In this document: positions 8,118-57,539 of the stretch, piece after piece | Layout of the letters: every line of letters starts with the position of its first letter | How positions within the stretch are numbered: the first letter of the stretch is position 1 | Assembly: GCF_006345805.1 (NCBI RefSeq) | Contig: NC_043007.1 | Span: 68,882,001 to 68,946,000 of the forward strand | From: Octopus sinensis | Lineage: Eukaryota | Reading direction: 5' to 3' | DNA: 64,000 nucleotides | Program-made: the position numbers and the translations under genes | The notes under the pieces: generated by a model | The model's database searches: none | The model's input: only the letters and a program-made list of their open reading frames with translations | Told to the model about the DNA's origin: nothing

Positions 8118-8373
8118 TATATATATACTTATATATACATGTATATATATATACATATATATACATATATATACATATATATACTATATATACATATATA
8201 TATTCATATATATACATATATATATAAATATATATATATACACATATATATATACATATATATATATGTATATATATATACATATATATATATAAACATA
8301 TATATACATATAAATACAGATAGACAGACAGATAACTAGAAAGATTGATTGATATGTATATGTACGCATATAT

Positions 8374-8422
<49 letters not shown>

Positions 8423-9798
8423 GTACATGCACACACACACACAAGCATATGCATGTATGTATTCGGATTGTTGAATTGCTGAATACGCTTTGGGTGACTG
8501 TCAACGGCAGATAAACCACTTTCTTCCTTAAAATTATAATATATTTGTAAATGGTTAATATTCTTTTCAAGCATAGTTGCTTAGCATACAAAATGAAAAA
8601 CTAATGTTAAAGACAGGGAATAGTATATTTGGAGATCATGGGTCATTCCTGTGAAAGCACGCACTTAGCTGATAACTTTTGACAGTTTATATAATCAACC
8701 GAAGTTCTCTCTTGCATCAAATAAAGAACAATAATTTGAGAATATTTCGCTTAAAGCCTTGTGGTATTTGCACCCATTGTTCATATTCTTAGTTCGATTC
8801 TCGCCGAGGTCACCGTTGCCTTTAATTCTTTTGCTGTCGATAAAGTAAATTAACAGTCGAGTATTTGGATAGTTGGAATCGACAATACCAACCCTCTTCC
8901 ATTACAACTGCTTGCCTTGTGTTTTAATTAGAAAATATTACGTAGACAGTTGTATCCACTGTATCAGTTATTTTAAAGCAGCAAGATATTTCTCAGAAAT
9001 AATTTGTTGAATTTCTACTATCGTAAATGATTTCAACAAAAGTTCATTAGTCGGGTTTGTCTACAGAAGCCTAGTAGGGTTTCGCGGTAGTGCTGGTGGT
9101 GGCGGTGACAGTAGTGGTGGTGGTAGTGGTGGTGATGATGATGATGTTACTGGTGGAATTTGTGTTGATGGTGATGCTGGCGACGACAATGATGGTGGTG
9201 ACAATAAGAAGGATATGAACGAGAAGAAACGCAAGAACAAAATGAAGGATGCTAACCATTTAAGTAGTGAGAGAGAAAGGGAGAGAGAGTATGTGTGTGT
9301 GTGCATGTGTGTTTGTGTGGCTGTGATAATCGGTTAAATATTTGACAAGATAACGTTTGGTCTTTAATTTAAAACTAATCAAGTCACAACTGAGTTCTTA
9401 TTTATCTTTAATTTAGAATAGCTAAAACGCTATTAACAGTTCATTCCACTTGGGGATTTTCATATCCAAATATATTCGAATTGATTCACACCAATTTTCG
9501 CTGGTGTATATGTACTCCTATTGGGTATATATATATATATTATATATATATATATTATAATATATATATATATATATTAATAAATTTTAGGGTAGTAAAA
9601 AATTCTAGAAAAGTTCTCCGCTACCAGCGGTCAAGTGGGAAAGAGAAAAATAGTCAATAGACTATATAATATACATTCAAACATATAAGGGATGGCTATA
9701 ATAGAACATCCGACTCACTAGAAAGAGCAGCTAAACTCCAAACCACTAATAGTTGTAATTCTGAAATGGAAAAAGAAATAAAAACGTTTAACCCTTTC

Positions 9799-12561: not shown

Positions 12562-13346
12562 CTGAAATATATGCTGATAGTGTACACACTATTTCCTGAA
12601 CTACAATAGACCCGCATAAGTAAAATAAATTTAAATAAAGTAAGAGAAGTAATTTTATAATGTAAAACTTAAAACTATATAATTAACGTTCATGCGTTGT
12701 TTCAACGCCAGAAAATGCAGTTTTTGTTCTACTGCATAATTTATTCTACTTATACGAAGTCATTCCAAGTCCAAAAAGTAGTATACGCACTATCTGTATA
12801 TACTTCAGTTAAACAAATCAGAACTTATGCATGTAGTACTGATGACCCGCAAATCCGGTGAAATAGGGTGTATGCCGCTCTCATAATCCCTTTTGGATCG
12901 ATTTCGTTTCGTTTGGTATGTTGCTTTTAATGCTCTATGTCTTCCAAGGGATTTTTCCAGACAAAACCTGCAACTTCTGGTGTTTAAACAACTCACGTTA
13001 AGTATGCGGTATTAATAATGTTTACATTACATAGATTCTTCTATTGTAATTCGCACACACACTCATAATTATGTATATATGAATCCACACATGTACATAC
13101 ATACACATACATACATACATGCATACATACATACATACATGCATGCATGCATACATACATGCATACATATATACATAATATATACATACATATATATACA
13201 TATATGATAATATAAATAATATATATGCATATATATATTATTTATATTATTATTTGCTTGAACGCTACGCAACCATTTCCAAATATATATAAACATGAGT
13301 ATATGTATATATATATATACACACATACATATATTATATATATATA

Positions 13347-13424
<78 letters not shown>

Positions 13425-13559
13425 GTGTGTATATATATATACATATATATACATACACATGACAGATGTAAATAGACACCCTTATAATCATAAAAATTTA
13501 TTTAAATCTGAAATTATACATTCAAATTATTTATTAATTGTTATGATGTGAATATTTAA

Positions 13560-22974: not shown

Positions 22975-25900
22975 CCACCTGTACCTACACCTTAGAACCA
23001 TCATGGCATCAGACGTGGCTTTTTAAACCAGACAATATTCTGAAAAGACACCTACACAGATTGCATATTCGATTTGGACCACTAAGAGGTGCAGATAAGT
23101 TCTGATCTTTGTGGATCTTAACATGTCTTTTGAGGCCTCCGTTAAATTTGCAAACCTTCTAGCGTACATTGCATTCAAAGTTGTGCACAGACATATAAGC
23201 AGAATAGCTGGTGGAGGTTAGTTTTCCATGGGTTCACAAATGAGATTTGAGCCCAGCAAAAGAAAAGCATTGTCCGTCACAAACTGTGCACAAAAAAGAT
23301 CATTGTGATTCACCTTCTCGATCGTAACATTCTTCCTTAAATCTTCTTTGAGTCTTGCAAGCGTTATCCTGGCCTCTTCAAACGCTTTCACTCCACTCCA
23401 CACTTTTGTTCGTTATCCAGCTCGATCCGAAGCAAAAGTTTCTATGTCATCTGGTTCCATTCCAAGTGACTTCATAGTAATCCTTATGCCGTTCTTAAAC
23501 CTTTTTTTAGGTTTACGCCGATAGCGTTTCCCCTCTGGAAGCTCACCATAAAACAACTATTTGGGCATGCGTTCATCCACCATTCGAACAATATGGCTAC
23601 ACCAGCTCAGTTGCTTTCTCAGAATTATAGCTTTAATTGAGGCGATGCTTGCAGATGCAAAGACATCTGTTTTTGGTGGAATTGTTCTAACAATTTAAAA
23701 TATCTTTCATAACAAGTTCATGTTTCACAAGAATACAACAGGGATGATAAGACAAATGATTTGTAAGGAACCAACTTTCTATTGTTATTTATGTGTCGCT
23801 GGCGCCAAACACGTGACACCAATCCACCATATGCTTTTGCAGTCCTTTCAATTCGCAGATGTATTTCTGTATCAAGATTTCCATCATTTTGAAAAGACCT
23901 TCGAAGGCAGATGAACGAATCAGCAACCTCAACAGCCCTTAACAAAAGGTTTAGTGGGGTTACAAACAGCACCATACTCAGGTTGATGCATTACAACTGT
24001 TTTTTTTTTATTTTTTCAAGTTGATGGTCAAGCCCAAATCATCACAAGCTGACTCAAATGCCGATACAAGAGATTGCAGACCTGTTTCAGAATAACTGAC
24101 AAGATCGCAATCGTCAGTGTATAAAAGTTCACTAATGAGTGAAGTAAAAACCTTCGTCTTGAATTTCAGTCTGGTCAGATTAAAAACATTCCCTGTTGTT
24201 CGATATTGTATATAAATACCCTCCTCAGAGCTTTGAAAAGCCTGTGACAACACAACAGCAAAGTATATTGCAAGGAGGGTGGGTGCATCAAGGTCTCCTT
24301 GCTTTATTCCATTTTCCACGGCAAAAAATTCAGAGAGCCTACCAACAAAACTTATCTTGATACAAAATCATATCTTGATGCAAAACCTTGATCATGTTTA
24401 GAAATTTTTCTGGGTAACCTATTTTCCTTTGAATTAGCCACAGAGCATTTCGATTAACAGTAGCGAATGCTTTTCTCAAATCAACAAAGCAATGATATAG
24501 GGCAAGATTCTGTTCAATGCACTTTTCTTGAAATTGTCTGATAGTAAAGATACAATCAGCTTTGCCACTGGAGGAACGAAAACTACACTGAAACTCAGAC
24601 ACTATATTTGGAACTATCAGACCCTGGAGATTTATTGTCATTCAGCTTATTCACAGCTAAATAAATGTCATTTAGAGTTTGTTCAAATGCCATCTCTTCT
24701 ATAACTGGAAAATGTTCGATTTTTTTTATCATGATCATGTCAGCAGATGATGATCTATTCGAAAGTGCAGAAAAATGTTCTACCTAGCGCTTATGAATTG
24801 AAGCGGCGTCAGTCAGAAGCAAACGTCTATTTGCCGTTCTCACTGTATCTGTTGAAGATTTTGGGCCATATACCTCCTTAACATAAGAGTACAAACCTTT
24901 GACATCATTTCTGTCAGCTGCTTCTAGTGCCCTTTTGCTCTAGCATTCTACCATTCCTGTTTAATTTTCCTCAGAGCAGTCTGCACTTTCCCTTTCAGCT
25001 TTCTGTAAACTTCGCTTGTGCTGGGGTTCAAGAACTGAGAAGGGAGTGTATTGCCTAAGTTTTGTTTTTCTAAAAGTAGATCATGAATTTCTGCTGATCT
25101 ATCTGAGAACCAGTCACTGGAGTTACGTGATTTAAATCCCACTGACGAACTTCCAGACTGAAATACGTTTCTTTCAAAATCTTCCCATAGATTGTTTGGG
25201 TCAAGATTGATACTTTCTATAGGATCGTTGAATCTTTGCAAGTTCCTTGATAATTTAAAGTTTGCAACATTGAATTTCTTGGTTACCTTAGGACCAGCCT
25301 GTCGATTTTTAGGCATTATCGAAAAACATTTTCCACGCACCCGACAATGGTCAGTCTTACTCTCTGCTCCTCTCATGACCCGAATGCTAGAAACATATTT
25401 TATATCACGTTTCTGATCAAAATATAATCTAAGAGATGCCATTGCTTAGATCTTGGGTGCATCCAGGTGGTTTTATATATATATTTTCTGCTTAAACAGA
25501 GTGTTGGTAACAAACAAATTATTCTCTGTACAAAATGTCAAGAGAGCTACTCCATTTTTATTACATTTTCTAATTCCATGTCGACCTAAAACAGGCCATG
25601 GAATGTAGTCCTTTCCAAAATTGCGTTGAAATCTCCCAATATGACTAGCTTGTCAGAAATTGGTACTTTCCTCAATAACTGTGCTAGATCATCATAAAAT
25701 TGTCCTAAAGTTTCATCAAAATAGGACATTGTTGATGCATAAATACTGACAACGGCAAGAAACCTACCTATTGACAGTTTAATACGGCATGACATGGTTC
25801 GTTCAGAGACACCACTTGGAAGCTCGGCAATGAAGGATACTAATGAATTCTTGAGAGCCAAACCAGCACCAGCTTCTCTACGTTGACGCTTAGGTAGGCC

Positions 25901-26225
25901 TCTCCAAATGATAGTGTATCCATAAGTGGGTTCATTTACTTGACCCTCACCAGAGAAACGAGTTTCAGAGAGTGCAACTATATCAAGGACATATTTCTTA
26001 AGCTCACATGCTTTCTGGCCTCTTGTTGAAATTATCATCAAGAAGTGTGCGCACATTCCAGCCAAAATTCAAAGGATGTTTATTTTTACTTTATCTTGAA
26101 GATTGTTTGACCACAGTGGCAGGATGGCGACCGGGCCCAGCCTGCGATACACTGGGACACCTGCTGAGCCAGACCTGTTCCCTTGACGTTCCCAAGCCTT
26201 TTTTGCCATTTACTGAATGCGCTTG
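22975..26225 (-). mobile_element. Degenerate RTE-clade LINE (APE endonuclease + reverse transcriptase)
   Basis: DIVALSETRFSGEG, VSIYAST, LVILGDFNA (EN); FVDLRKAFATVNR, GIKQG, LLYTDDCDL (RT); many stops and frameshifts; ends approximate. Confidence 0.9.
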
Positions 26226-30143: not shown

Positions 30144-33100
30144 TCACACGGTTCCTTGCACGCACAACACTCGTGCAACATACTTCCATCTCTTTTGGAA
30201 CGTACACTCTGACAGACACCTCTTCTCCAGCCACAGTTTCCTTTTCAAATGAAAAGAAAAAAAGGATCGTAAATTGTCACCAGAGATAAAGTTGCCTGTC
30301 TTAATTCCTTTTATCCTAGTATTCCATACAGCCTCTTTTGCTATTGCTACAACCGTGAGAAAACAATTCTTACCTTCGTTCGTTAGAACTCCCTGTGGGT
30401 CAATATTTATAATTGACTCAGTCGACAGCCGTACTCTTCCTTCGCCGGACAACAGATGTTCAGCATAAGCCCACATTTCAGTTATCTCCGGACACTGAAC
30501 AATAGCGTGAGGGACGGTTTCCCTGTCCCCCACCGCATCTTGGACAGGTCGGCGACTGACGTTTACCATGTCTTGCGAGCTTATCCCAAACGGGCAAGGC
30601 ACCTCTGTAGCATTGCCAGGTTAAGGACTTTTGGAAGTTGTCCAACGTTCTCAACCCGAATGTACGATGAAACAAGCTGTCCAGTTGAATAAATCCGAGA
30701 CCTAGAGTCGACCCCAGGCCATCGTCGCATTCAGACTCTACCTACCCACTATATAAAATCCGTGTGGAACCCCCACCGCTGGCGTTGCCCGAGCGCCGGA
30801 ACAGCAAGAGGGCCTTACGGCACTCTTTATGCCACTCACTCGACCTCGGTCTACGAGAACACCAGGCTTCCTGTTCGCAAAAACTCTTGAACTCAGGGAA
30901 CATTTGTCTGGCCAGCGGAGACCACACCCGTTCACTATCCAGGAGAATCCAGAGGTGCCTCAACCTCAACGCATGTCTGCGCATCATTAACCAAGGCATC
31001 CCTAAACCTCCATTTAAAGGCTTTTGACAGCAGACAGAGCGTTTCACAAGTGGCGACCTGCCCTTCCACAAAAAGCGAAAGAGCTGTCTCTCCAACCTGA
31101 TCAACCACGAATCCGGACAGGGCACGACAGTCAGGCGGTAGGTAATGACCGATGCGATAAACACATTGGCCACTTCCGCCCTCCCTTTCAGGGATAGCCA
31201 CCGCCAAGACCAGGTCTTGACTACTGCAGCCACCCTGCTCAATACCTCCGTCCAGTTCTTCTCTATCTGGAGGCCTGGTCCAAACCAGACTCCCAGCAAC
31301 TTAACCGGTCCCTCCGTCCAGCGCCTAACAACACTGTCTGAAGGCATCGACTTGCCAACCCAGGTGCCGAGCTGCAAGCCGACCGACTTTTCCCGGTTAA
31401 TCTTTGCTCCTGCTACCTCCTCGTAAGCCTCAATAGTCTTACCTACTTCACGTAGGCGTGCCACTGTGGTTACACTGATAGTGATATCATCCGCGAAAGC
31501 CGTAACAAACTCCTCTAGTCCTGGTTCTCTCGGGATGCCACTCAACTTTGCAGTAATGGCTCGAGAGCCATCACATACAAAAGTGGTGAAAGCGGACATC
31601 CTTGACGAACCGAGCGTCTGATGCAGAACGGCTTCGAAAGGAAACCGTTCACCCGAACTATCGAGTCAATGTTGTGGTACAAAGCGATAAACCACCTGAG
31701 GAAGCCAAGGACCAGGCCAAACCGCGCAAGTACAGTCGTTAGGTATCGATGGTCAACCCTATCAAAAGCTTTAGACTGGTCCAAATGCACCAATGCCCCA
31801 CCTTTGCCAGATTTATTACCAAACCTCTCTATGGTATAGCGAATAAGATGGAGGGTATCCTGAATGGTTCTGCCTGGGATGGCACATGTCTGTGCCTCCC
31901 CGACTATACCATTCGCGACACGCGCCAACCTTTTTGCTAGAACCTTGGCCAAAATCTTCACTTCTGCGTTTAACAGTGTGATGGACCTGAAATTCTCTAG
32001 AACGTCCCCCTTGTCCGGGTCCTTTCTGACCAACGTCACTACTCCCCGGCGCACAGATCTGGGGATAAACCCATTCTGTTTCCAGTTCGCGTACACGTCA
32101 GTCAGTAGTTGCCCGAACAAGTCTGGCATACATTTATACAGCTCGTACGGAAGACCATCAAGTCCCGGTGACTTACCCGCTTTACAATCGGCCAAAGCCT
32201 CCATCACCTCCTCAAGTGTGATTGGCCCTTCGCAAGACTCCGCATCCGACCCCGAGAGGCACGGCAGCCCGGTAAGAAAGTCCTCGAGGGCTCTCCCCCG
32301 AACAGCTGGGCGAAGTACTCCCGAAAGACCTCACACATTTTCTCGGGTTCGTTTATCAAGACACCATTTTGATTCGTCAAAGACCGAATAGAGGAACTAT
32401 TTCCTTGCCGAGCTTCCACCACTCGGGCCCATCCAGCGGCTTTGATTCCTTCACTTCCCATTGCACGTAACTTAGCTCTGGTAATACTTCCCATGTGGTG
32501 GGCTTCAAGATGCTGGTTTAACTCCAGTCTTTTCACCCTCGCTTGGTCTGTATTACCAGTCCTCCAGGCTTCTTCTAGTTCCTTAACTAGACCATCTCCT
32601 ATTTTACGTCCCTTCTTAGCTAAACTTATGCTAAACCTAATAGACTCATATTTGATGGCTCTTTTTAGGGCGTACCACCATTTGTTATTAATGATGGTAC
32701 CTGTTAATGCCCTCTGTATTAACATCTTGATCCGCTTTCTGTACTCCTCAATCGCCAAAAGGGACGTATTGAGTTTCCAGTAGCCAGATCCCTGTCTATG
32801 CAACTTATCTACCGTCAGTTTACAGGTAACCATCTTGTGGTCACTGTAGCTGACTAGAAAAAACTGTGGACACTCAACTATGGACTTATCTTTTTCTCTA
32901 ATTAAAATCCTATCTAGATATGTTCTGGTAGACCCGTCACTATTTGACCACGTCCACTGTGGAGTGTTCGCGTGCTCCAACCTATATGGATCTGCTAGCT
33001 GAAATTGGCTTAGCAGATCCCGAAAGCCTGTGTTACATTTTCTGTTCATGTTCGAGTTTGAGCCAACACAATCTGTGTGTGCTGCACATATTGTATTAGA

Positions 33101-33522
33101 GTCTCCTAACACTACTAGTGAATGCGACGTGGCTAGGAACTTTCCTAGGCCACGAAAATATTCAGTTTGCGGGCCAATAATGTTTGGTGCATAAATAGCG
33201 ACCAGCCTGATTGTCTTGCCACAACTGAATGTCAAGTCGAGAACGACCAGCCTGCCTTCTGGGTCAGAAAAAACCAACTTTTTCTCGGCTACCCGGTTTC
33301 TTTTTAGTAGGACCACACCCCACCCCCACCTCCCGCCCGACTCGGAGAAACGTATTTCTCGTAGCCGTTCAGGAGGGGGAGCAGATCTCTTGGCCCCTTC
33401 ACCCGGGTTTCCGTTGCAACAATTACATCCAAATTCCTCGACCTGATGTCATTCAGAAAGCGTCCTTGCTTCCAGCTTGACAACAGGCCATGAACATTTA
33501 AACAACCAATGTGAATAGCCAT
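30144..33522 (-). CDS. Tx1-like ORF2 (APE endonuclease, reverse transcriptase, zf-RVT), frameshifted
   Basis: IGCLNVHGL, ATETR, LVAIYAPN, VLGDSN, YLDRI, SDHK (EN); SPGLDGLPYELY, DQSKAFDRVDH, RQGCPLSPLLY, FADD (RT); CPRC...ETVPHAIVQC; split into about six ORF-track pieces. Confidence 0.88.
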
Positions 33523-33533
33523 CACTTACCTGT

Positions 33534-35058
33534 TTAATTAGGATTGTCTGGTGGAGGGGGGACCTCCACCTTTTTTTATCCAGGGTCGGAGGTGGACGGT
33601 CTTGGGAAATAGATTTGTCAAAATCCCGTCTCACCACCGACACAGAATTATCAGGTGGAGGGGGAATCTCCACCTTTTCCTTTTCTCGCGGGATCGGAGC
33701 TGGTAATCCATGAAATATCGACTTGTTAAAATCTAATCTCAATGAAGATACAGTCTTTCTGTACTTATTTTGTAGAATTCTATAAGTCTTATTTGAGACT
33801 TCATATATGTCGTAATTGATAAATTCCTCTGAAAGGTTATCAATTTTTTTTACAGTCTTTATGAGTTGAATGTCTCTCATGAGCTCAGTATCTTTAGTGT
33901 ATACGGCTATTATGCCTTTTTCTTCTTTTTCTCTTCTGGCAGTCTTTTTTGGTCGTTGTTCTGTAGTAGTCGCCGCTCTCGGCTGGGTTGCTGGTTGTAT
34001 TTTTCTTTTGTTTGTTGTTTTTCTCATCTGTTTCTTCTTTATCTTCTTCCTCTTTGTCTTTTTTCTCCTCTTCCTCCTCTTCTTCATTTTCCTTGCAGTT
34101 CCTTCGAATGTGGCCTAATTGACCACATAAAAAACATCGAGGTTTTCGGCCCTCAACAAACACCACGAGGTTCTCCTCCCCTACCTCAATTGTCTCAGGA
34201 ATTGTTTGAATTATTTTAGGGTCCGCTTGAATGAGAAGATTAATTGTTTGACCATCCCAGCGTGGGTTTTCCGTAGCGGTAGCCTGGAGGAGAGTAATTT
34301 TTTCTACCTCTTTGATTAGGACTGCCGCCAACAACCACATAGGTTCGACCTCTGGCGGGACCCTTGTAATTTTTATTCGCGACGTCCTCATCCCCATATA
34401 ATAGGGTATTAACTCCACGTCGTTCGTTTTCAACGTTTCAACTGAGTTCTTGTGTGCTATTTCTTTATTGGTGAACCTTACTTCCACCGTTCCGAATTTT
34501 TTCCTCTTCTCAGAAATACTACGTCGCCCAATATTGGCTTTAAGCACTTTTCTATTTTCTCTTCTGACATTCTTTCAATTTTTCTATTTTGTAGACAATA
34601 TGTTTTGAAAATTATTGTTTTTTGCTTTTCTTCCTGTAATAACTTTTGCGGAGGTTCAATTTTCACACTGTTGTCAGTTATTTCCATCATTTTGCTGTAT
34701 TTCATAATTTCGCTTTTATTCGTCGACAGTATCTGGGTTCCACCCCCAGCAGCCAACGCAAAACTTTTTTTCCATTTTTTGGTTCTATCTGGATGCTAGG
34801 CACATCAATTATTCTCTTCGACACAATGCCTTTGTTCTCTGGCAAAGTCGGAAACTCTTCTGGTGAAAGTTCTGACGAGCTCTCAGACACATCTCCAAAA
34901 ATATCAAATATATTATCCTCTCTGCTATTCCTTCTTGTAGCGGGGGAAACCCCTATTTCCTTGTCTGTAGTTGGCTCCTCGCCGGACATGTATTTCCTCC
35001 TCTCAACAGGAGAAACAAGTATTTCTGCTCCAACGGTAGGCTCCATGCTAGACGACAT
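33534..35058 (-). CDS. Tx1-like ORF1 (gag-like, zinc knuckle), frameshifted
   Basis: CFLCGQLGHIRRNC at 34095-34136 preceded by the typical L1/Tx1 ORF1 region and followed by an acidic/basic tract; pieces in four frames. Confidence 0.8.
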
Positions 35059-36982: not shown

Positions 36983-38240
36983 CAGGGTGTTTGAAATATT
37001 TGAGGACAGATTTATGTTCATAAAAAAAATACAGATGTATAATAGCAGATAATAACTTTATCAAACGATGCTGAGAATAAAAATAAACCTTCTTTATAAT
37101 GTTATTCAATAAAGTGACCTTCAGCTTCAACAAGCGCTTTTATATGAGATCTAAATCATCTACATGCTTGAATCAAGTAGTCCTGGTTCACATTGGACAT
37201 TACTCTGCCAATGGCATCTTTCATAGAATCTTTGGTGTTGTGAGCATGTTCATTGACCCCTCTCTCTCTCTCTCAACAACGCTCCAGATGTAATAGTCCA
37301 GTGAGATCTGGAGAATTAGGAGGCCAAATCTTTGCGGTTATGGGATGATGAAAATTTTCAGCCATGCATTCCTGTGTTACTAGAGCCTTGAGTGATAGTG
37401 CAGAGTCTTACTGAAACACATATGGCCTTCCATTGCATACACTATCTATCCAGGGCTTAACAATTATTTCCAGGACCTCAATGTAGGCAGCAGAGTTAGC
37501 TCTAAGGCCTTGTGGAAAGAAATAATGAGGTATCACATGTACGTCATTGCTGACAACCCTTAAAATCATGACAGCTGCAGAAAAATTTGTATGCATAACG
37601 CTTGGAACTTCAGAATGGTCTGCACATAACCTTCTGTCATTTCTTCTGTTAACTTTTTGATCTTGGTCGAAGTTTTTTTCGTTTGAGAAAAACCAAATCA
37701 AATCTTCTTCTGCTTGATTTTCCAGTTTCTTTAAGAGCCTTTTATATCTGATATAGTGATTTTCTTTTGCTTTTCTGACAAATTGATCTTTTCTCATCAT
37801 ATAAGACTTATATCTGATGTCTTAGTGGACAACATTTCTGAGTGTTCTTTCTGACAAATGGAGATATTTTGCAATTGACCTCATGGACTTTCTGGGATTT
37901 TAATCAATGGTCTGTTGAACTTGCTGGATAACTTCGGGTGCTCTGATGCCTTCTGAGCATGTAGGATGTTTTATGCTTTGACACTGGTGTTACGTTTCCA
38001 TCTTCAATCTCTAGCTCCTTACACACTTTGTAGACGAAAGATCTGGTAACTTTTAAAAATCGAGATATTTCTAAATCGCTAAGCTCAGCCTTTATACCAC
38101 AATAACAGCATGCCTCTTCATTTCTTGAGTTAGCTCCAGGCCTGCCATTATCATTTTCTGAAGCAAAGATTATACAGAGTTAGCAAAAAAAAATGCAGCA
38201 ATGACCCAAAAAAGGTGTCCTCAAATACCTTAGGACCCTG
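36983..38240 (-). mobile_element. Tc1/mariner element, maT (DD37D)-like, degenerate
   Basis: Imperfect TIRs CAGGGT...TATTTGAGGACA at both ends, TA at right flank; WFFSNEKNFDQDQKVNRRNDR, GRPYVFQ, WPPNSPDL motifs. Confidence 0.85.
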
Positions 38241-39457: not shown

Positions 39458-40860
39458 AGCGTACCCAAAAGTAACAGGAACATTTCCTGTGGAACAAACC
39501 CGTTGTAGTTCAGGCTTCCGCCGCTAGAAGCTACTTGATGTGACCCTTAGACATCAGTATACCGAGCGGTGTCCTCGAGTGAAGTCGTACTGTTACATGG
39601 TGCGTCTGTGTTTTGCAATACTTCTCCTCTGTTCGGCGATTTTTGCGATGGCTGAAACGAAGGAATTGTGTGCTTCCGTGAAATTCTGCTTTCTGACTGG
39701 TAAACCGGCGGTAAAGAGGGTGCTGTCATGAGCAAAACACTAGATTACAAGTGGTTTCCACGTTTTAGGAATGGTCACTTGTTGCTTGAAGACCAGCTTC
39801 GTTCAGGACGACCGTCTGCAAAACATTTTCCTTTAAGGACTTCTTTTATTCGGGAAAACAAAAAGTCGAAGGGAGCAAGATCGAGTGAATAGGTTGGGTG
39901 GGGAAGCGGAGTCATGCCATTTTCGGTCAATAACTGTCTTACACACAAGGCGGTGTGCGCAGGCTCATAGTCATGACTAAACCACCACACTCCATTTTGC
40001 CACAGGTCGGAGCGTCTTTATCTCACTGCGTCTCGTAAATGCTTCAGAAAAATGTCTGGTCAACAGTTTGTCCAGGAGAAACAAATTCTTTGTGAACAAT
40101 TCCTTTCGCATCGATGAAACAAATCAGCATCGTCTTGACACTGGACTTCACTTGAAATGCCGTTTTAGGGCGTAGTGAAATCGAATTCTTCCACCGACTT
40201 GATTGCTGCTTCGTGTCCGGGCCATAGCTGAAGAACCACCTTTCTTCACCAATGATGACTTTCGCAAAAAGATCCGGATCAACTCCCAACTGTTTTTCTG
40301 TTCACGACGACACGTATTCAGTCGTGACTGCGTTTGGTCTTCCATAACCAAGCGAGGCACAAATTTTGCTGTAACTCTCTTCATTCGTAATTCATCGCTC
40401 AAGATTCTTTGGCAAGAGCTCCAGGACACACCAGTCATATCAAGAAGCTCATTAATTGTTCGGCGACGGTCCTTCAAGTTCACTTCATGAATTTTCGTGA
40501 TGTTTTCATTCGTTCGGGAGGTTGACACTCGCCTTAAACGAGGATCGTCTTCAAGCGACAAATGATATTTTCTAAAGCGTGAAAACCATTCCTAAACTTG
40601 TGTTTTGCTCATGGCAGCGTTCTTGTAAGCTGTTTGAAACATGATTACTGTTTCGGGAGTAGTTTCCTTAGCAGGAAACAGAAAATCACGGAAGCACACT
40701 GTTCATTCGTTTCGACTACTGCAAAAAATCGACGAACAGGGGAGAAGCACTGCAAAACAAAGACGTACCACATGACAACACGACTTCACCCGAAGACGCT
40801 GGTCGGCAGACTGATGCCTGAGGGTTGCATCAAGTGGTTTATAGCGGCGGATGCCTAAAC
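39458..40860 (-). mobile_element. mariner (DD34D-type) element with an inverted 5' segment in place of its 3' end
   Basis: Minus-strand transposase pieces LEDDPR, KRVTAKFVPRL, IIGEERW, HPTYSLDLAPFDF; 39509-39816 (+) is an inverted homologue of 40540-40859. Confidence 0.85.
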
Positions 40861-41620: not shown

Positions 41621-42129
41621 GGACACTACTGGTTGCTGGGACAGGATGACCTTAGTAGCCAGTCACGTGTAATACAGCGATCGGTATTAGCACGACTGTC
41701 CCATAGGAATATTGGTATTAGATGAAGATTTGCATTACCAATTATTCGCATCACCAACAATAACTCCATCCGTGTCGGCGCCATCGTTATAATATTTTCA
41801 TCATCATCATCATCAACAGCAGCAGCAGCAGTATAAGAGGCAGAATCATCATCATCATCATCACCATCATCGTCGTCGTCGTTGTCGTCGTCATCGTCAT
41901 CGTCGTCGTCGTCATTATCGCTGTCAATGTCGTCGCTATTGAGATTCTCTTTCAGATGCTACTGCAAATGCAAACGGCATCGAATTATAGCAATTGCTGT
42001 CCTGCCACGCACACACAGACACAGACAACTTTACAAACACAAAATCCAGACGTGCACACATCTGTGCACGCACGCACGCGCACACGCGCACACATATACA
42101 ACACATACACCGACACAATCACAACACAT

Positions 42130-42231
<102 letters not shown>

Positions 42232-42240
42232 TGATTGATT

Positions 42241-42380
<140 letters not shown>

Positions 42381-42712
42381 CACACACTTGCACCCACTCA
42401 TTCACACACACATACTCATGCACACCCACTCACACAGAGACAAGTATACATAATACATTATATATACATATGTATATAAACACACACAAACATTCACACA
42501 CACACATTCATATATATGATAATTCTGTTTTCATGTATAAATGTTTATAAAAACTGTCAAACATTACGTTTAAGGATTAAGGACCGTGCAATATTTTTCG
42601 ACAGAGCAACATATGTGTTTTATATTTACAAAGAAATTGTTGGCAGTTACTTGGAAGTTTCTATTATGTTGCTCTCATTGTATGAAATATGAATATGTGT
42701 GTGTATTTGTGT

Positions 42713-54527: not shown

Positions 54528-55290
54528 GACGAACAACAAAGAGCTATATATAAAAGAAGAAAACAAAAAAAAATATATGCAAAAATAAACTTAATACAAA
54601 AAGAACAACACTCCTACACCGCTTTCTCTATCACTGTCACCACCACCACCACCACCACCACCACACCACCAATACCAGCAACAACAATACCAGCAACAAC
54701 TATAACAAACAATAACTCTCTCACTACAATAAAAGACAAGAATAAAATCAACGACATTCAAATACCGATCGCATGCAAAGAAATAAAGAAATAAAGAAAT
54801 AAAGAAAAAAAGAAACAAACAAACAAAGAAAAAAAGAAAGAAAGAGAAGAAGAAACAATTTGCAAGAATAATCGGGGACGGGAAGGAGGGTGGTTATCAG
54901 AGTGTCAGTGGTGGTGGTCGCGGTGGAAGCAGAGTGGATGCAGGTATGAACTTTTTTATGAACGCAAGAACGCGAAGAAAGAGGTAGATTATAGGTGGTG
55001 TGCGTGTGCGTGTATGTGTGTATGTGTATGTGTGTGTGTGTGGTAGGTGGAGGGGGAGGGAAGGAGAGAGTGAGAGGGAGGGATGGAGGGAGGGGGTAGA
55101 GAGTGATTGAAAGAAAGTGTGAGCTGTGATAGATTTATTATGAACAACAAATGCAACAACAGTCACTACTACCATCACCACTTCCTCCGCAACTACAAAA
55201 CAACAGCAAAAGCTACTACTACTACTACTACTATTAAAACTACTACTACTACTAGTAGTAGTAGTAGAACTACTGCTACTGCTACTGCTA
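52770..55290. repeat. Mosaic of degenerate trinucleotide repeats (CAC/GGT/CAG/GCT/GAG/ACT)
   Basis: Triplet-periodic low-complexity blocks with alternating strand polarity; every frame is interrupted by stops. Confidence 0.8.
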
Positions 55291-55407
55291 TGTAGACGAT
55301 AAAAGAAAAAGAACGATAAACATTATGCCGCTTTGGGTTGGACTTAAAAGTGAAACTGCCTGCTGAGAGGCCTATGCATCCTACGCAAGATGGGCAAACC
55401 TCTTGCT

Positions 55408-55438
55408 TATAAATACACGCGTTTCTACAACATCCAGT
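55408..55438 (+). promoter_or_regulatory. Core promoter of the neuropeptide gene: TATA box + initiator
   Basis: TATAAATA at 55408-55415; TCCAGT initiator-like sequence with A at 55436, 28 nt downstream of the TATA start. Confidence 0.6.
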
Positions 55439-55708
55439 GTAAAAGCTGCAATACTTATCTAACAGCAGCTTGCATATTGCCTTCACTGCACGGTCATTTC
55501 TTTTAGAGACAAATAAAACAAGGGAAGAAATCTTAATAACTTATCGATCTGCAAGTACATCAGCAGCAACATAAAGATAACCGCAACAGCATCAGCAGAA
55601 GTTAATATTTTTATCAACTTGCCTTAGAGGAAGAAAGAACAAGAGATAAAAAGACACTGACTGTTGCATGAAACGGATTTGAAATTCCCTATCCTTCAAA
55701 CCAACGAA

Positions 55709-56638
55709 ATGCATTCTTATGAAATAATTCTAAAATTAAGTCTTGCCGTTTTGGCATCTTCACTGCTTGTGGAAACTCATGACTTTAAAAGCTACTCGAA
55801 TGCTGACAAAAGGTTTAGGGCGTCTGGTGACAGAATAAAAGACCTGCTAAGAAAAAGAAATGTTAACAGTTTCATGGAAATGGAAAGCCCAGAGAATTAC
55901 ATTCGCGAACTGGCTGCTAATCGAGGAATTGAAATTGACTATCCAGAACATTTTGACAAGAGAATTAGAGAATTAGTCGGCAAACGATATCCTGAAAATT
56001 TTGACAAAAGAATTCGAGAATTGGTTGGCAAACGAGGAACAGAAATTGACTATTCCGATCACTTTGATAAAAGAATTAGAGAATTGGTTGGCAAACGTGG
56101 GACCGAAATAGAATATCCTGATCACTTTGACAAAAGAATTAGAGAATTGGTTGGCAAACGAGGAAACGATGTGGAATATTCTGATCACTTTGACAAAAGA
56201 ATTAGGGAGTTGGTTGGCAAACGAGGATCAGAAATTGAATTTCCTGACAAGAGAATTCGGGAACTGATTGGTAAACGTGGAGGTGAAATTGATTATCCTG
56301 ACAAGAGAATCCGAGAATTGATCGGTAAACGAGGAGGCGAAGTTGAATATCCTGAAAATTTTGAGAAGAGAATTAGAGAATTAATTGGCAAACGAGGCAC
56401 TGAAATCGAATTTCCAGACAAGAGAATTAGAGAATTAATTGGTAAAAGAGGAACTGAAGTTGAGTATCCTGAACATTTTGACAAGAGAATCAGAGAACTG
56501 GTTGGTAAACGTGGAAATGAAGGTGAAAATGCCGAACATTTTGACAAGAGAATCAGAGAATTGGTTGGTAAAAGAAGTGTTCCATCAAATATCAGTAAAA
56601 ACGTCGTTAAACGAAATGTAGAGAAAGTAGAAGGTTAA
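55709..56638 (+). CDS. Neuropeptide precursor (309 aa) encoding IRELV-amide x7 and IRELI-amide x4; possibly PRQFVamide/LRNFVamide-related
   Basis: First in-frame ATG at 55709 (the ORF track starts at TTG 55664); signal peptide MHSYEIILKLSLAVLASSLLVETH; 11 KR-IREL(V/I)-G-KR cassettes; extensive synonymous variation between cassettes. Confidence 0.93.
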   Translation: MHSYEIILKLSLAVLASSLLVETHDFKSYSNADKRFRASGDRIKDLLRKRNVNSFMEMESPENYIRELAANRGIEIDYPEHFDKRIRELVGKRYPENFDKRIRELVGKRGTEIDYSDHFDKRIRELVGKRGTEIEYPDHFDKRIRELVGKRGNDVEYSDHFDKRIRELVGKRGSEIEFPDKRIRELIGKRGGEIDYPDKRIRELIGKRGGEVEYPENFEKRIRELIGKRGTEIEFPDKRIRELIGKRGTEVEYPEHFDKRIRELVGKRGNEGENAEHFDKRIRELVGKRSVPSNISKNVVKRNVEKVEG

Positions 56639-57261
56639 TTGGTTGCTAGGAGCAACGAAAATTAATGCAAATATTGGAATATTTAAATAAGGAAAAACAA
56701 AGGTTCTACACAATGACCGGGAGAAAGAAAACAAGTCACATGAAGAAAAGCAAAAAATCATTTTTAAAAAATGTCTATTTCAGGAAACCAAATTTTTCAA
56801 AAAAAAAAAAAAAAAGACAAAATATTTAACATTCATTTCAGAATGAGAAATCAAAGAAATGAAAACCAGGTGAAATGATTTTAAAAATATATATATTTCA
56901 AGAAATATATATATACATATATATACATTCACAAAATAGCAACAGAAGAAAACGAGATAAAATTTATATTTTGGAAGAAAATAATAATGGTAAAATAATT
57001 TTTAATATATTAAGAATGATTATAGTAATAACAATAAGTAATAATAATTAATAATAATAATGATGATAATGTTGATGATGATTATGATGATATGACACTA
57101 AAAATGTCGAAATGGAAATTATATTATCTAAAAAAAAACAAACCAAAAACACATAACAGGACTTATTTTTAAAAGTTCTACTAATTAAATTACCTACCTT
57201 TTCCTTCCTACATGCTCCAAGCTTTCTTCTGTTTTTTATTTCTCGTTCCTCTCTCACGATC

Positions 57262-57303
<42 letters not shown>

Positions 57304-57472
57304 ATACATATATATGAAGTTTAACAACATCTTTCCTCACTACCCATAAACTATCATGAAGTAAAAAAAAAAATAATTGAAATCGCACCGTTGTTTTTAT
57401 GCCTTCTTAATTCTTGCTATTTCTGTGTGAGTGTATATACATACATACATACATACATACATATACATATAT

Positions 57473-57539
<67 letters not shown>

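What the first reader, a model, noticed from the sequence alone, without database searches (positions are those of the whole stretch)
55709..56638. IRELV/IRELI-amide precursor: a neuropeptide I cannot match to a described sequence
Seen: 11 pentapeptide cassettes ordered V5-I4-V2, each KR-flanked with a Gly amide donor. The peptide Arg uses AGA, CGA, AGG and CGG codons and Leu uses TTA, TTG and CTG while the protein is invariant, indicating purifying selection. Degenerate copies (IKDLL, IRELAA) lie N-terminally. Established: molluscan PRQFVamide and LRNFVamide precursors encode repeated x-R-x-F-V-amide pentapeptides. Inference: a divergent cephalopod member with L replacing F, or a new family; receptor unknown.
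Basis: partly seen in the sequence, partly recalled or inferred. Interest (0 to 1): 0.8.

Follow-up and report, generated by a model that had tools for sequence, protein, structure and literature searches.

The report
Octopus PRQFVamide-family neuropeptide precursor gene
This is a real octopus gene for a small-peptide brain hormone precursor (11 copies of IRELV/IRELI-amide), but it is the octopus member of the known molluscan PRQFVamide/LRNFVamide family and its exact protein sequence was already published in 2019, so it is ordinary.

Summary
Window 55709-56638 (+) is one uninterrupted 309-codon ORF with a hydrophobic signal-like N-terminus.

The "unmatched neuropeptide" part does not hold. 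The translated ORF is 309/309 identical to "octopusVulgaris.12157", printed in Supplementary Datasets S2/S3 of De Oliveira et al. 2019 (PMC6425005). That sequence was assembled from RNA-seq run SRR331946. It sits beside O. bimaculoides model Ocbimv22004644, among Theba LRNFVamide, Deroceras prqfvamide and Lottia PRQFV-amide-like precursors.

Database searches return only x-R-[E/D/Q]-[F/L]-[V/I/L]-GKR precursors, including Lymnaea, Biomphalaria, Bulinus and unionid bivalves. Some bivalve-like precursors carry IRELV/IRELI next to F-type copies. The scallop "LRNFVamide" precursor is already reported to yield SRELVamide. Octopus "prqfv" genes are already used as neuronal markers.

The gene is therefore the cephalopod orthologue in which every copy has Leu instead of Phe at position 4. 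Still open: mass-spectrometric proof of IRELV/IRELI-amide, the receptor, and which published prqfv1/prqfv2 label belongs to this locus. Novelty: already known. Interest: low.

The parts
55407..55418 (+). TATA-box-like motif TTATAAATACAC, putative core promoter 302 nt upstream of the ATG
   Evidence: This is the only TATAAA in the 900 nt upstream. The same 12-mer lies 208 nt upstream of the ATG of the related precursor in L001/L002, and in the O. vulgaris copy L003. Promoter function is inferred, not shown.
55709..56638 (+). Complete single-exon coding sequence (309 codons plus stop) of the IRELV/IRELI-amide precursor, the octopus PRQFVamide/LRNFVamide-family gene
   Evidence: The translation is 309/309 identical to octopusVulgaris.12157 in PMC6425005 Datasets S2/S3. 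The same protein is encoded on GCA_006345805.1 CM016869.1 and GCA_951406725.2 OX597824.1.
55709..55774 (+). Signal-peptide-like N-terminus (MHSYEIILKLSLAVLASSLLVE); the exact cleavage site was not determined
   Evidence: The Kyte-Doolittle 11-residue mean is 1.5-2.5 over residues 4-13 as window starts, then falls below 0. It aligns with MHPFEIVLHFSILALASTYTAA of the L001 precursor. No dedicated signal-peptide predictor was available.
55835..55858 (+). Decayed copy IKDLL-RKR (no Gly amide donor)
   Evidence: O. bimaculoides has IKGLL here, so the site is not conserved.
55901..55924 (+). Decayed copy IRELAANR (dibasic sites and Gly lost)
   Evidence: It aligns with the first intact KRIRELVGKR of the L001 precursor.
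55958..55987 (+). Cassette 1, KR-IRELV-GKR
56006..56035 (+). Cassette 2, KR-IRELV-GKR
56069..56098 (+). Cassette 3, KR-IRELV-GKR
56132..56161 (+). Cassette 4, KR-IRELV-GKR
56195..56224 (+). Cassette 5, KR-IRELV-GKR
56249..56278 (+). Cassette 6, KR-IRELI-GKR
56303..56332 (+). Cassette 7, KR-IRELI-GKR
56366..56395 (+). Cassette 8, KR-IRELI-GKR
56420..56449 (+). Cassette 9, KR-IRELI-GKR
56483..56512 (+). Cassette 10, KR-IRELV-GKR
56546..56575 (+). Cassette 11, KR-IRELV-GKR
55988..56545 (+). Span holding the ten acidic spacers that separate the cassettes: YPENFD, then G-x-E-[IV]-[DE]-[YF]-[PS]-[DE] with or without an HFD/NFE tail. The DNA forms a tandem array of 63- and 54-nt units with higher-order periods of 117 and 171 nt
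   Evidence: Spacer list and pN 0.23 / pS 0.52. TRF periods 63, 54, 117 and 171.
56576..56635 (+). C-terminal tail SVPSNISKNVV-KR-NVEKVEG. The terminal Gly could make NVEKVE-amide
   Evidence: O. bimaculoides has NVEKLEG. Amidation of the tail is inference only.

Best explanation
Window 55709-56638 is the intact, expressed, single-exon gene for the octopus precursor of the molluscan PRQFVamide/LRNFVamide ("xRxFVamide") neuropeptide family. The window is 100% identical to assembly GCA_006345805.1, which I recall to be Octopus sinensis. The protein is identical in the O. vulgaris assembly and transcriptome.

Inferred mechanism, from the standard secretory-peptide pathway:
- The N-terminal signal peptide directs the protein into the secretory pathway.
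- Prohormone convertases cut at the KR pairs.
- A carboxypeptidase removes the trailing Lys-Arg.
- Peptidylglycine alpha-amidating monooxygenase converts the exposed Gly into a C-terminal amide.

One precursor would then release 7 IRELV-amide and 4 IRELI-amide, plus about ten acidic spacer peptides.

The pentapeptides most likely act as neuromodulators or co-transmitters on a still unidentified receptor. By analogy with Aplysia PRQFVamide, their effect on feeding and gut circuits would be inhibitory or modulatory. If this locus is one of the published octopus prqfv genes, it would also act in optic-lobe and central-brain neurons.

For: Shown here:
- The ORF, cassettes and codon pattern are as described.
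- Cassette pN/pS is 0.027/0.60, against 0.23/0.52 in the spacers.
- All 10 substitutions and the 3-aa insertion between the window protein and O. bimaculoides Ocbimv22004644 lie outside the 11 cassettes.
- O. vulgaris and the window differ by one synonymous base in the CDS and no indel, while the flanks carry about 1% mismatches and many indels.
- The second L-type precursor, from an unnamed organism (L001, Logan run ERR12921336), shares the signal peptide and the pentapeptide but not the spacers.
- Family assignment: phmmer hits have E 1.8e-33 to 4.6e-13 (plus one at 9.7e-4). All are x-R-[EDQ]-[FL]-[VIL]-GKR repeat precursors, including the PRQFV-bearing Bulinus, Lymnaea and Biomphalaria proteins.
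- An exhaustive HMMER scan of 1.84e9 representatives gives the same picture.
- IRELV/IRELI occur beside LRDFV/AREFV in P0005, P0009 and P0010. IRELL, PRELV and QRELV occur in the named unionids Sinanodonta and Potamilus.

From papers:
- The identical sequence is in PMC6425005 Datasets S2/S3, derived from RNA-seq SRR331946.
- The scallop LRNFVamide precursor yields SRELVamide (PMC5996578).
- Octopus PRQFVamide homologues are reported in optic gland, peduncle complex, optic-lobe amacrine cells and paralarval brain.
- Aplysia PRQFVamide is cited there as inhibitory on feeding neurons and gut.
Against: - No peptide-level evidence (mass spectrometry, amidation) for IRELV/IRELI-amide was found in any text I could read.
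- The Sepia peptidome paper (Zatylny-Gaudin 2016) is not held.
- Similarity to gastropod and bivalve precursors rests almost wholly on the short repeated cassette, so strict orthology, as opposed to family membership, is inferred.
- Phe4, present in 81% of family copies, is absent here, so receptor and function may differ from Aplysia.
- The qPCR primers published for "Ov-PRQFV" (PMC5736919) do not match anywhere in the 64-kb window. At least one octopus "PRQFV" in the literature is therefore another locus.
- I could not map prqfv1/prqfv2 or prqfva1/prqfva2 to this gene.
- The signal peptide was judged by hydropathy only.
Confidence: 0.9

Rival explanations
1. It is a new, cephalopod-specific neuropeptide family that resembles PRQFV/LRNFVamide only by convergence of short KR-xxxxx-GKR repeats.
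For: Similarity outside the cassettes is nil for gastropod and bivalve hits. Position 4 is Leu in all 11 copies, whereas 81% of copies in the homologues have Phe. No Pfam family covers it.
Against: Four of five peptide positions fit the family: Arg2 is invariant, position 3 is acidic, position 5 is V/I, and position 1 is I/L/V. The Gly-Lys-Arg context also fits. Intermediate precursors carry IRELV, IRELI and VRELI together with LRDFV and AREFV on one chain (P0005, P0009, P0010). Searches of billions of proteins return this family first and other amidated-repeat families only at much weaker E-values. A published clustering places it among LRNFVamide/PRQFVamide sequences.
Confidence: 0.05
2. The functional products are, or include, the conserved acidic spacer peptides. 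These have the pattern G-x-E-[IV]-[DE]-[YF]-P-D(HFD), with a Tyr in an acidic context that could be sulfated. On this reading the pentapeptides are not the only products.
For: Spacers within the octopus precursor follow one pattern with pN/pS of about 0.45 on raw proportions (JC-corrected dN/dS 0.31), that is, below neutrality. Most spacer residues are kept between O. sinensis/vulgaris and O. bimaculoides.
Against: The spacers are not conserved at all in the L001 precursor, nor in any gastropod or bivalve relative, while the pentapeptide is. All interspecific changes between the two octopus lineages fall in spacers or flanks. Spacer similarity is explained by recent tandem duplication of 54/63-nt units and of a 171-nt block. 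Sulfation is speculation.
Confidence: 0.05
3. It is a non-functional or unexpressed repeat ORF, such as a pseudogene or an artefact of a coding-like tandem repeat.
For: The ORF lies in a repeat-rich, gene-poor stretch with LINE debris and microsatellites.
Against: The full-length, identical protein was assembled from O. vulgaris RNA-seq run SRR331946. The reading frame is intact in three octopus genomes or gene models. There is strong purifying selection on the cassettes. A TATA motif is shared with the related locus.
Confidence: 0.01

Closest known systems
Aplysia californica protein PRQFV-amide (UniProt Q86MA7; Furukawa et al. 2003, as cited in PMC5736919 and bioRxiv 10.1101/340984), and the PRQFVamide precursors of Lymnaea, Biomphalaria, Bulinus and Deroceras
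   Same: A secreted precursor with many tandem pentapeptides, each KR-flanked with a Gly amide donor. The consensus is x-R-[E/D/Q]-x-[V/I]. IREFV, VREFV, LREFV and AREFV copies differ from IRELV by one residue. Significant similarity: E 1.0e-30 (Bulinus), 6.2e-23 (Lymnaea), 8.6e-21 (Biomphalaria).
   Different: The octopus precursor has no PRQFV copy and no Phe at position 4 in any copy. It has only 11 copies of two near-identical peptides, against a mixture of 4-6 peptide species in gastropods. The spacers are unrelated.
LRNFVamide precursors (Lottia gigantea Lotgi1|233778; Theba pisana Tpi-LRNFVamide-1/2; Patinopecten yessoensis LRNFVamide precursor)
   Same: Same architecture and the same Arg2 / hydrophobic C-terminal amide. 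In the datasets of PMC6425005 the octopus sequence is printed between Tpi-LRNFVamide-2 and -1. The scallop precursor is reported to yield SRELVamide, an xRELV-amide like the octopus peptide (PMC5996578).
   Different: These precursors are dominated by LRNFV/LRDFV or xRYFL copies. L at position 4 is at most a minor copy there and the only form here.
Unnamed bivalve-like precursors P0005, P0009, P0010 (ENA/Logan assemblies) and the unionid proteins of Sinanodonta woodiana and Potamilus streckersoni (P0016, P0019)
   Same: They contain the very peptides IRELV, IRELI and VRELI (or IRELL, PRELV, QRELV), each followed by GKR.
   Different: Those L-type copies sit next to a majority of F-type copies (LRDFV, AREFV, MRDFV) in short 230-265-aa precursors.
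L001/L002 precursor (P0001/P0002; Logan runs ERR12921336 and ERR12921338; organism not named, probably another cephalopod)
   Same: It is the only other purely L-type precursor found (IRELV x4, IRELI x2, IRELL, VRELV). It has a similar signal peptide and the same TTATAAATACAC motif upstream.
   Different: It is 198 aa with 8 intact copies. The spacers are unrelated. The last copy ends in Gly-stop. The first copy is intact where the octopus copy has decayed to IRELAANR.
Platynereis FVamide and molluscan MIP/PxFVamide, fulicin-like precursors
   Same: Tandem short amidated peptides ending in F-[V/I/L]-amide. They appear as weak hits (E 1e-17 to 1e-4) in the exhaustive search.
   Different: There is no Arg-acidic pair at positions 2-3 (ARMFV, PYEFV, xPxFV). 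These are separate families in published catalogues.

Membership tests
PRQFVamide/LRNFVamide (xRxFVamide) neuropeptide precursor family | Secretory precursor with an N-terminal signal peptide | tested here: met
   There is a hydrophobic core at residues about 5-21 followed by a polar stretch. It is alignable with the N-terminus of the L001 precursor. Judged by hydropathy only; no SignalP-type tool was available.
PRQFVamide/LRNFVamide (xRxFVamide) neuropeptide precursor family | Multiple tandem pentapeptides, each preceded by a dibasic site and followed by Gly-Lys-Arg (cleavage plus amidation signal) | tested here: met
   11 exact KR-xxxxx-GKR cassettes.
PRQFVamide/LRNFVamide (xRxFVamide) neuropeptide precursor family | Peptide consensus: Arg at position 2, E/D/Q/N at 3, V/I/L at 5 | tested here: met
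   I-R-E-L-[V/I]. In the 19 distinct homologues tallied (P0002 omitted as a duplicate of P0001), position 2 is R in 197/202 extracted sites, position 3 is E/D/Q in 199, and position 5 is V/I/L in 198.
PRQFVamide/LRNFVamide (xRxFVamide) neuropeptide precursor family | Phe at position 4 (the 'FV' of the family name) | tested here: not met
   All 11 copies have Leu. However, Leu occupies position 4 in 38 of 198 family-type copies in the homologues, on the same chains as Phe copies. SRELVamide is listed as a product of the scallop LRNFVamide precursor. Phe4 is therefore typical but not obligatory for membership.
PRQFVamide/LRNFVamide (xRxFVamide) neuropeptide precursor family | Significant, family-specific sequence similarity to named members | tested here: met
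   E 1e-30 to 1e-20 to PRQFV-bearing gastropod precursors. Every hit below 1e-18 is a precursor of x-R-[EDQ]-F-type amidated pentapeptides (one, P0029, ends in F rather than V/I/L). Caveat: the score comes from the repeated cassette.
PRQFVamide/LRNFVamide (xRxFVamide) neuropeptide precursor family | Prior assignment by curators or authors | tested here: met
   The identical sequence is printed among LRNFVamide/PRQFVamide precursors in cluster-ordered Datasets S2/S3 of PMC6425005. Its header carries no family label, so the assignment is read from its position in the file.
PRQFVamide/LRNFVamide (xRxFVamide) neuropeptide precursor family | Mature amidated pentapeptides detectable in nervous tissue; neuronal expression | not testable with these tools
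   Needs peptidomics or in situ data. Papers report octopus 'prqfv' expression in neurons, but I could not tie those gene names to this locus.
FMRFamide-related peptides (FaRPs) | Peptides ending in Arg-Phe-amide | tested here: not met
   The peptides end in Leu-Val/Ile-amide. No RFG motif is in the ORF.
Mytilus inhibitory peptide / PxFVamide family | Peptides of 6 residues or more with Pro at -4 and F-[V/I]-amide | tested here: not met
   There is no Pro and no Phe in the cassettes. Such precursors appear only as weak hits.

The most novel reading that the evidence does not exclude
The complete Phe4-to-Leu replacement in every copy, seen only in the octopus precursor and one other (probably cephalopod) precursor, may mark a lineage-specific ligand switch. 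It would have co-evolved with a still unknown receptor, making IRELV/IRELI-amide a functionally distinct cephalopod transmitter, for instance of optic-lobe amacrine cells, rather than a simple PRQFVamide equivalent. A weaker add-on is that the Tyr-containing acidic spacers are sulfated bioactive peptides.
Probability: 0.15. Interest if true: 0.4.

Novelty: already known. Interest (0 to 1): 0.12.

Why it matters
It matters little as a discovery. The gene, its protein sequence and its family placement are already public, and octopus prqfv genes already serve as cell-type markers.

What remains useful is practical:
- The report fixes the exact genomic locus, its single-exon structure and a likely promoter.
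- It states explicitly that the mature products should be IRELV-NH2 (x7) and IRELI-NH2 (x4), not PRQFV-NH2. Anyone making antibodies, synthetic peptides or receptor screens in cephalopods under the name "PRQFVamide" needs to know this.
- The receptor for the whole PRQFV/LRNFV family appears to be unidentified.

Tried and rejected
- Full-text searches for the peptide strings. Searches were swamped by substring noise (ganirelix, firelight). The cleaner search for 'IRELV' plus 'neuropeptide' found nothing relevant. The match came only from a supplement search.
- Pfam scan of the precursor and four homologues: only sub-threshold noise, including a below-cutoff TRH hit for Bulinus. The precomputed PF27357 label on P0001/P0002 is marked 'faint' and belongs to the spurious upstream extension.
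- The published Ov-PRQFV qPCR primers (PMC5736919) were searched in the window with up to 3 mismatches. There were no matches, so that amplicon is another locus or paralogue.
- I tried to map prqfv1/prqfv2 (bioRxiv 2022.06.11.495763) and prqfva1/prqfva2 (PMC9712504) to this gene. No supplement text or gene identifiers are held. A search for the O. bimaculoides gene identifier in main texts found nothing.
- An exact look-up of the window protein in the 15-billion-protein collection reported 'not in the collection', although look-up of encoding contigs located it on two NCBI assemblies.
- A second homologue search seeded with the L001 precursor found no further L-type precursors.
- The Sepia peptidome paper could not be read.
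- A scan of the whole window for another GKR-rich ORF (a tandem paralogue) found none.
- Rfam at gathering thresholds found nothing in the window.

Full report
**1. Observation**

Reading window 55400-57000 and translating 55709-56638 (+) gives one open frame of 309 codons plus stop. It starts with MHSYEIILKLSLAVLASSLLVE, a hydrophobic, signal-like segment: the Kyte-Doolittle 11-residue mean reaches 2.5, then turns negative.

A regex scan finds exactly 11 KR-IREL[V/I]-GKR cassettes.
- Val type: nt 55958, 56006, 56069, 56132 and 56195.
- Ile type: nt 56249, 56303, 56366 and 56420.
- Val type again: nt 56483 and 56546.

The codon claim is also exact. Peptide Arg uses AGA x7, CGA x2, AGG x1 and CGG x1. 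Leu uses TTG x6, TTA x3 and CTG x2. Lys, Ile, Glu, Gly and the trailing Arg vary synonymously too.

The two decayed copies are present: IKDLL-RKR at aa 43-50 and IRELAANR at aa 65-72.

A Nei-Gojobori count over all cassette pairs gives pS 0.60 against pN 0.027. The only replacement site is the V/I position. The first eight codons of nine spacers give pS 0.52 against pN 0.23. The pairs are not independent and the sample is small. Still, the contrast is large and supports selection on the cassette.

At the DNA level the array consists of 63-nt and 54-nt units, with higher-order periods of 117 and 171 nt. These higher-order periods suggest that multi-cassette blocks were duplicated, which could account for the V-I-V block order.

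**2. Source of the window**

The exact protein is encoded on two chromosome assemblies: GCA_006345805.1 (CM016869.1, about 68.93 Mb) and GCA_951406725.2 (OX597824.1, about 39.09 Mb). The window is 100% identical to the first over 10,930 bp and 97.0% identical to the second. From memory, not from a tool, these accessions are the Octopus sinensis and Octopus vulgaris assemblies.

Between the two, the CDS differs by one synonymous base and no indel. The flanks carry about 1% mismatches and many microsatellite indels.

**3. Relatives**

A search of 5.8 billion proteins returned 20 hits, 19 at E 1.8e-33 to 4.6e-13 and one at 9.7e-4. All are repeat precursors whose amidated pentapeptides follow x-R-[E/D/Q]-[F/L]-[V/I/L].
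- The named gastropod proteins (Bulinus, Lymnaea, Biomphalaria) mix PRQFV with I/L/V/A-RE/DFV.
- The named unionid bivalves (Sinanodonta, Potamilus) mix LRDFV, VRDFV and FRDFV with PRELV, QRELV and a C-terminal IRELL.
- Several unnamed bivalve-like proteins (P0005, P0009, P0010) carry IRELV, IRELI and VRELI on the same chain as LRDFV and AREFV.

Over the 19 distinct homologues (P0002 left out as a duplicate of P0001), position 2 is Arg in 197 of 202 extracted sites. Position 4 is Phe in 160 and Leu in 38.

An exhaustive HMMER pass over 1.84 billion representatives gave 59 hits at E <= 1e-3 and 22 at E <= 1e-10. The strong ones are again IREFV, LRDFV and PRQFV precursors. FVamide-type (ARMFV), fulicin-like (PYEFV) and LASGLV precursors appear only at weak E-values.

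Only one other precursor is purely L-type: P0001/P0002, from Logan assemblies of runs ERR12921336 and ERR12921338.
- It encodes IRELV x4, IRELI x2, IRELL and VRELV.
- Its signal peptide is similar (MHPFEIVLHFSILALAS).
- Its spacers are unrelated.
- Its first copy is intact at the position where the octopus has the decayed IRELAANR.
- It carries the same 12-mer TTATAAATACAC 208 nt before its ATG, against 302 nt in the window.

The shared motif suggests a TATA promoter and an intron-less gene. I infer another cephalopod.

**4. Literature**

The decisive result came from a supplement search. Datasets S2 and S3 of De Oliveira et al. 2019 (Sci Rep 9:4846, PMC6425005) print "octopusVulgaris.12157". 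A string comparison shows it is 309/309 identical to the window ORF.

In those datasets it sits next to "octopusBimaculoides.Ocbimv22004644". Its other neighbours are Theba LRNFVamide-1/2, Deroceras prqfvamide 1, Lottia PRQFV-amide-like and Platynereis FVamide. The paper's O. vulgaris data are RNA-seq run SRR331946, so a full-length transcript exists.

The O. bimaculoides protein differs by 10 substitutions and one 3-aa insertion. All of these lie in spacers or flanks, and none in the 11 cassettes.

The main text of that paper lists PRQFVamide among the lophotrochozoan repetitive peptide families.

Octopus PRQFVamide homologues are also reported elsewhere:
- as enriched in optic glands of unmated females (bioRxiv 10.1101/340984);
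- as cloned from O. bimaculoides (bioRxiv 10.1101/2023.11.27.568875);
- as prqfv1/prqfv2 FISH markers of dopaminergic amacrine sublayers and medulla neurons of the optic lobe (bioRxiv 10.1101/2022.06.11.495763);
- as prqfva1/prqfva2 markers in the O. vulgaris paralarval brain atlas (PMC9712504).

The scallop "LRNFVamide" precursor is reported to yield SRELVamide (PMC5996578).

The string IRELV together with "neuropeptide" occurs in no relevant main text of the held library. I found no receptor paper.

**5. What could not be tied down**

The qPCR primers for "Ov-PRQFV" (PMC5736919) match nowhere in the 64-kb window, even with 3 mismatches allowed. That amplicon is therefore another locus.

The same paper cites Zatylny-Gaudin et al. 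2016 for incomplete Sepia PRQFVamide prohormones and for PMEFLamide in haemolymph. This points to a second, differently built "PRQFV-like" gene in cephalopods. That paper is not held.

I could not decide which of prqfv1/2 or prqfva1/2 is this locus. The window holds no second GKR-rich ORF.

**6. Mechanism**

Shown:
- the precursor anatomy;
- selection on the cassette;
- the existence of a transcript;
- family similarity.

Inferred from the standard secretory-peptide pathway:
- signal-peptide removal;
- prohormone-convertase cleavage at KR;
- carboxypeptidase trimming;
- amidation from Gly.

This yields 7 IRELV-NH2 and 4 IRELI-NH2, plus acidic spacers and perhaps a C-terminal NVEKVE-NH2.

The modulatory or inhibitory role and the receptor class are analogy only. 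They rest on Aplysia PRQFVamide as described.

**7. Rivals**

- A convergent new family is unlikely. Mixed F/L precursors exist, and the family alone dominates the searches.
- Bioactive spacers are unlikely to be the main product. The spacers are not conserved beyond Octopus.
- A dead ORF is excluded by the transcript and the intact frames.

**8. Verdict**

The interpretation "divergent cephalopod member with L replacing F" is right. The claim of an undescribed sequence is wrong.

The finding is an already catalogued member of a known family. The residual open points are peptide detection, the receptor, and naming. Note that the mature peptides are not PRQFVamide. Interest is low.

Noticed in passing
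window 30144-34547 (- strand): A frameshifted non-LTR (LINE-type) retrotransposon. It has an ORF1-like protein with a CCHC zinc knuckle (33894-34547), an endonuclease/exonuclease/phosphatase domain (32204-33316) and reverse transcriptase split over two frames (31542-32207 and 30742-31599). It looks degenerate.
   Followed up: partly
window 24948-26065 (- strand): A second LINE fragment. The ORF at 25586-26065 hits Exo_endo_phos (E 1.2e-7). The adjacent ORF at 24948-25442 has no Pfam hit.
   Followed up: partly
window 37408-37800 and 40148-40561 (- strand): Two short ORFs whose sequences look like pieces of a mariner/Tc1-type transposase (my impression from the translation). Neither reached Pfam at E <= 1e-3.
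   Followed up: partly
window 55000-55300 and 56980-57500, and many other places (e.g. 8184-8591, 13069-13491, 41985-42429): Dense microsatellites (GT, TA, CTA, AAT and others) closely flank the neuropeptide gene. They account for most indels between the two octopus assemblies.
   Followed up: no
window 55988-56545 (spacers): Nine of the ten spacers share G-x-E-[IV]-[DE]-[YF]-[PS]-[DE], with or without an HFD/NFE tail. The Tyr sits between acidic residues, the usual context of tyrosine sulfation. This is speculation and was not tested. The spacers are not conserved in the L001 precursor.
   Followed up: partly
L001 753-764 / window 55407-55418: An identical 12-mer, TTATAAATACAC, lies upstream of both L-type precursor genes, 208 and 302 nt before the ATG. 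It is a likely shared TATA promoter element. No canonical AATAAA lies within 500 nt downstream of the stop; the first ATTAAA is at 57184.
   Followed up: partly
PMC5736919 primers versus the window: The published 'Ov-PRQFV' qPCR primers do not match this locus. Octopus expression data under the name PRQFV may therefore refer to a different gene. Sepia 'PRQFV-related' PMEFLamide hints at a second gene type.
   Followed up: partly
window 55709-56635 versus the protein collection: The exact-sequence look-up says the window protein is not in the 15-billion-protein collection. Yet look-up of encoding contigs finds a called gene with exactly this product on two NCBI assemblies. This is a tool or database inconsistency, not biology.
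   Followed up: no
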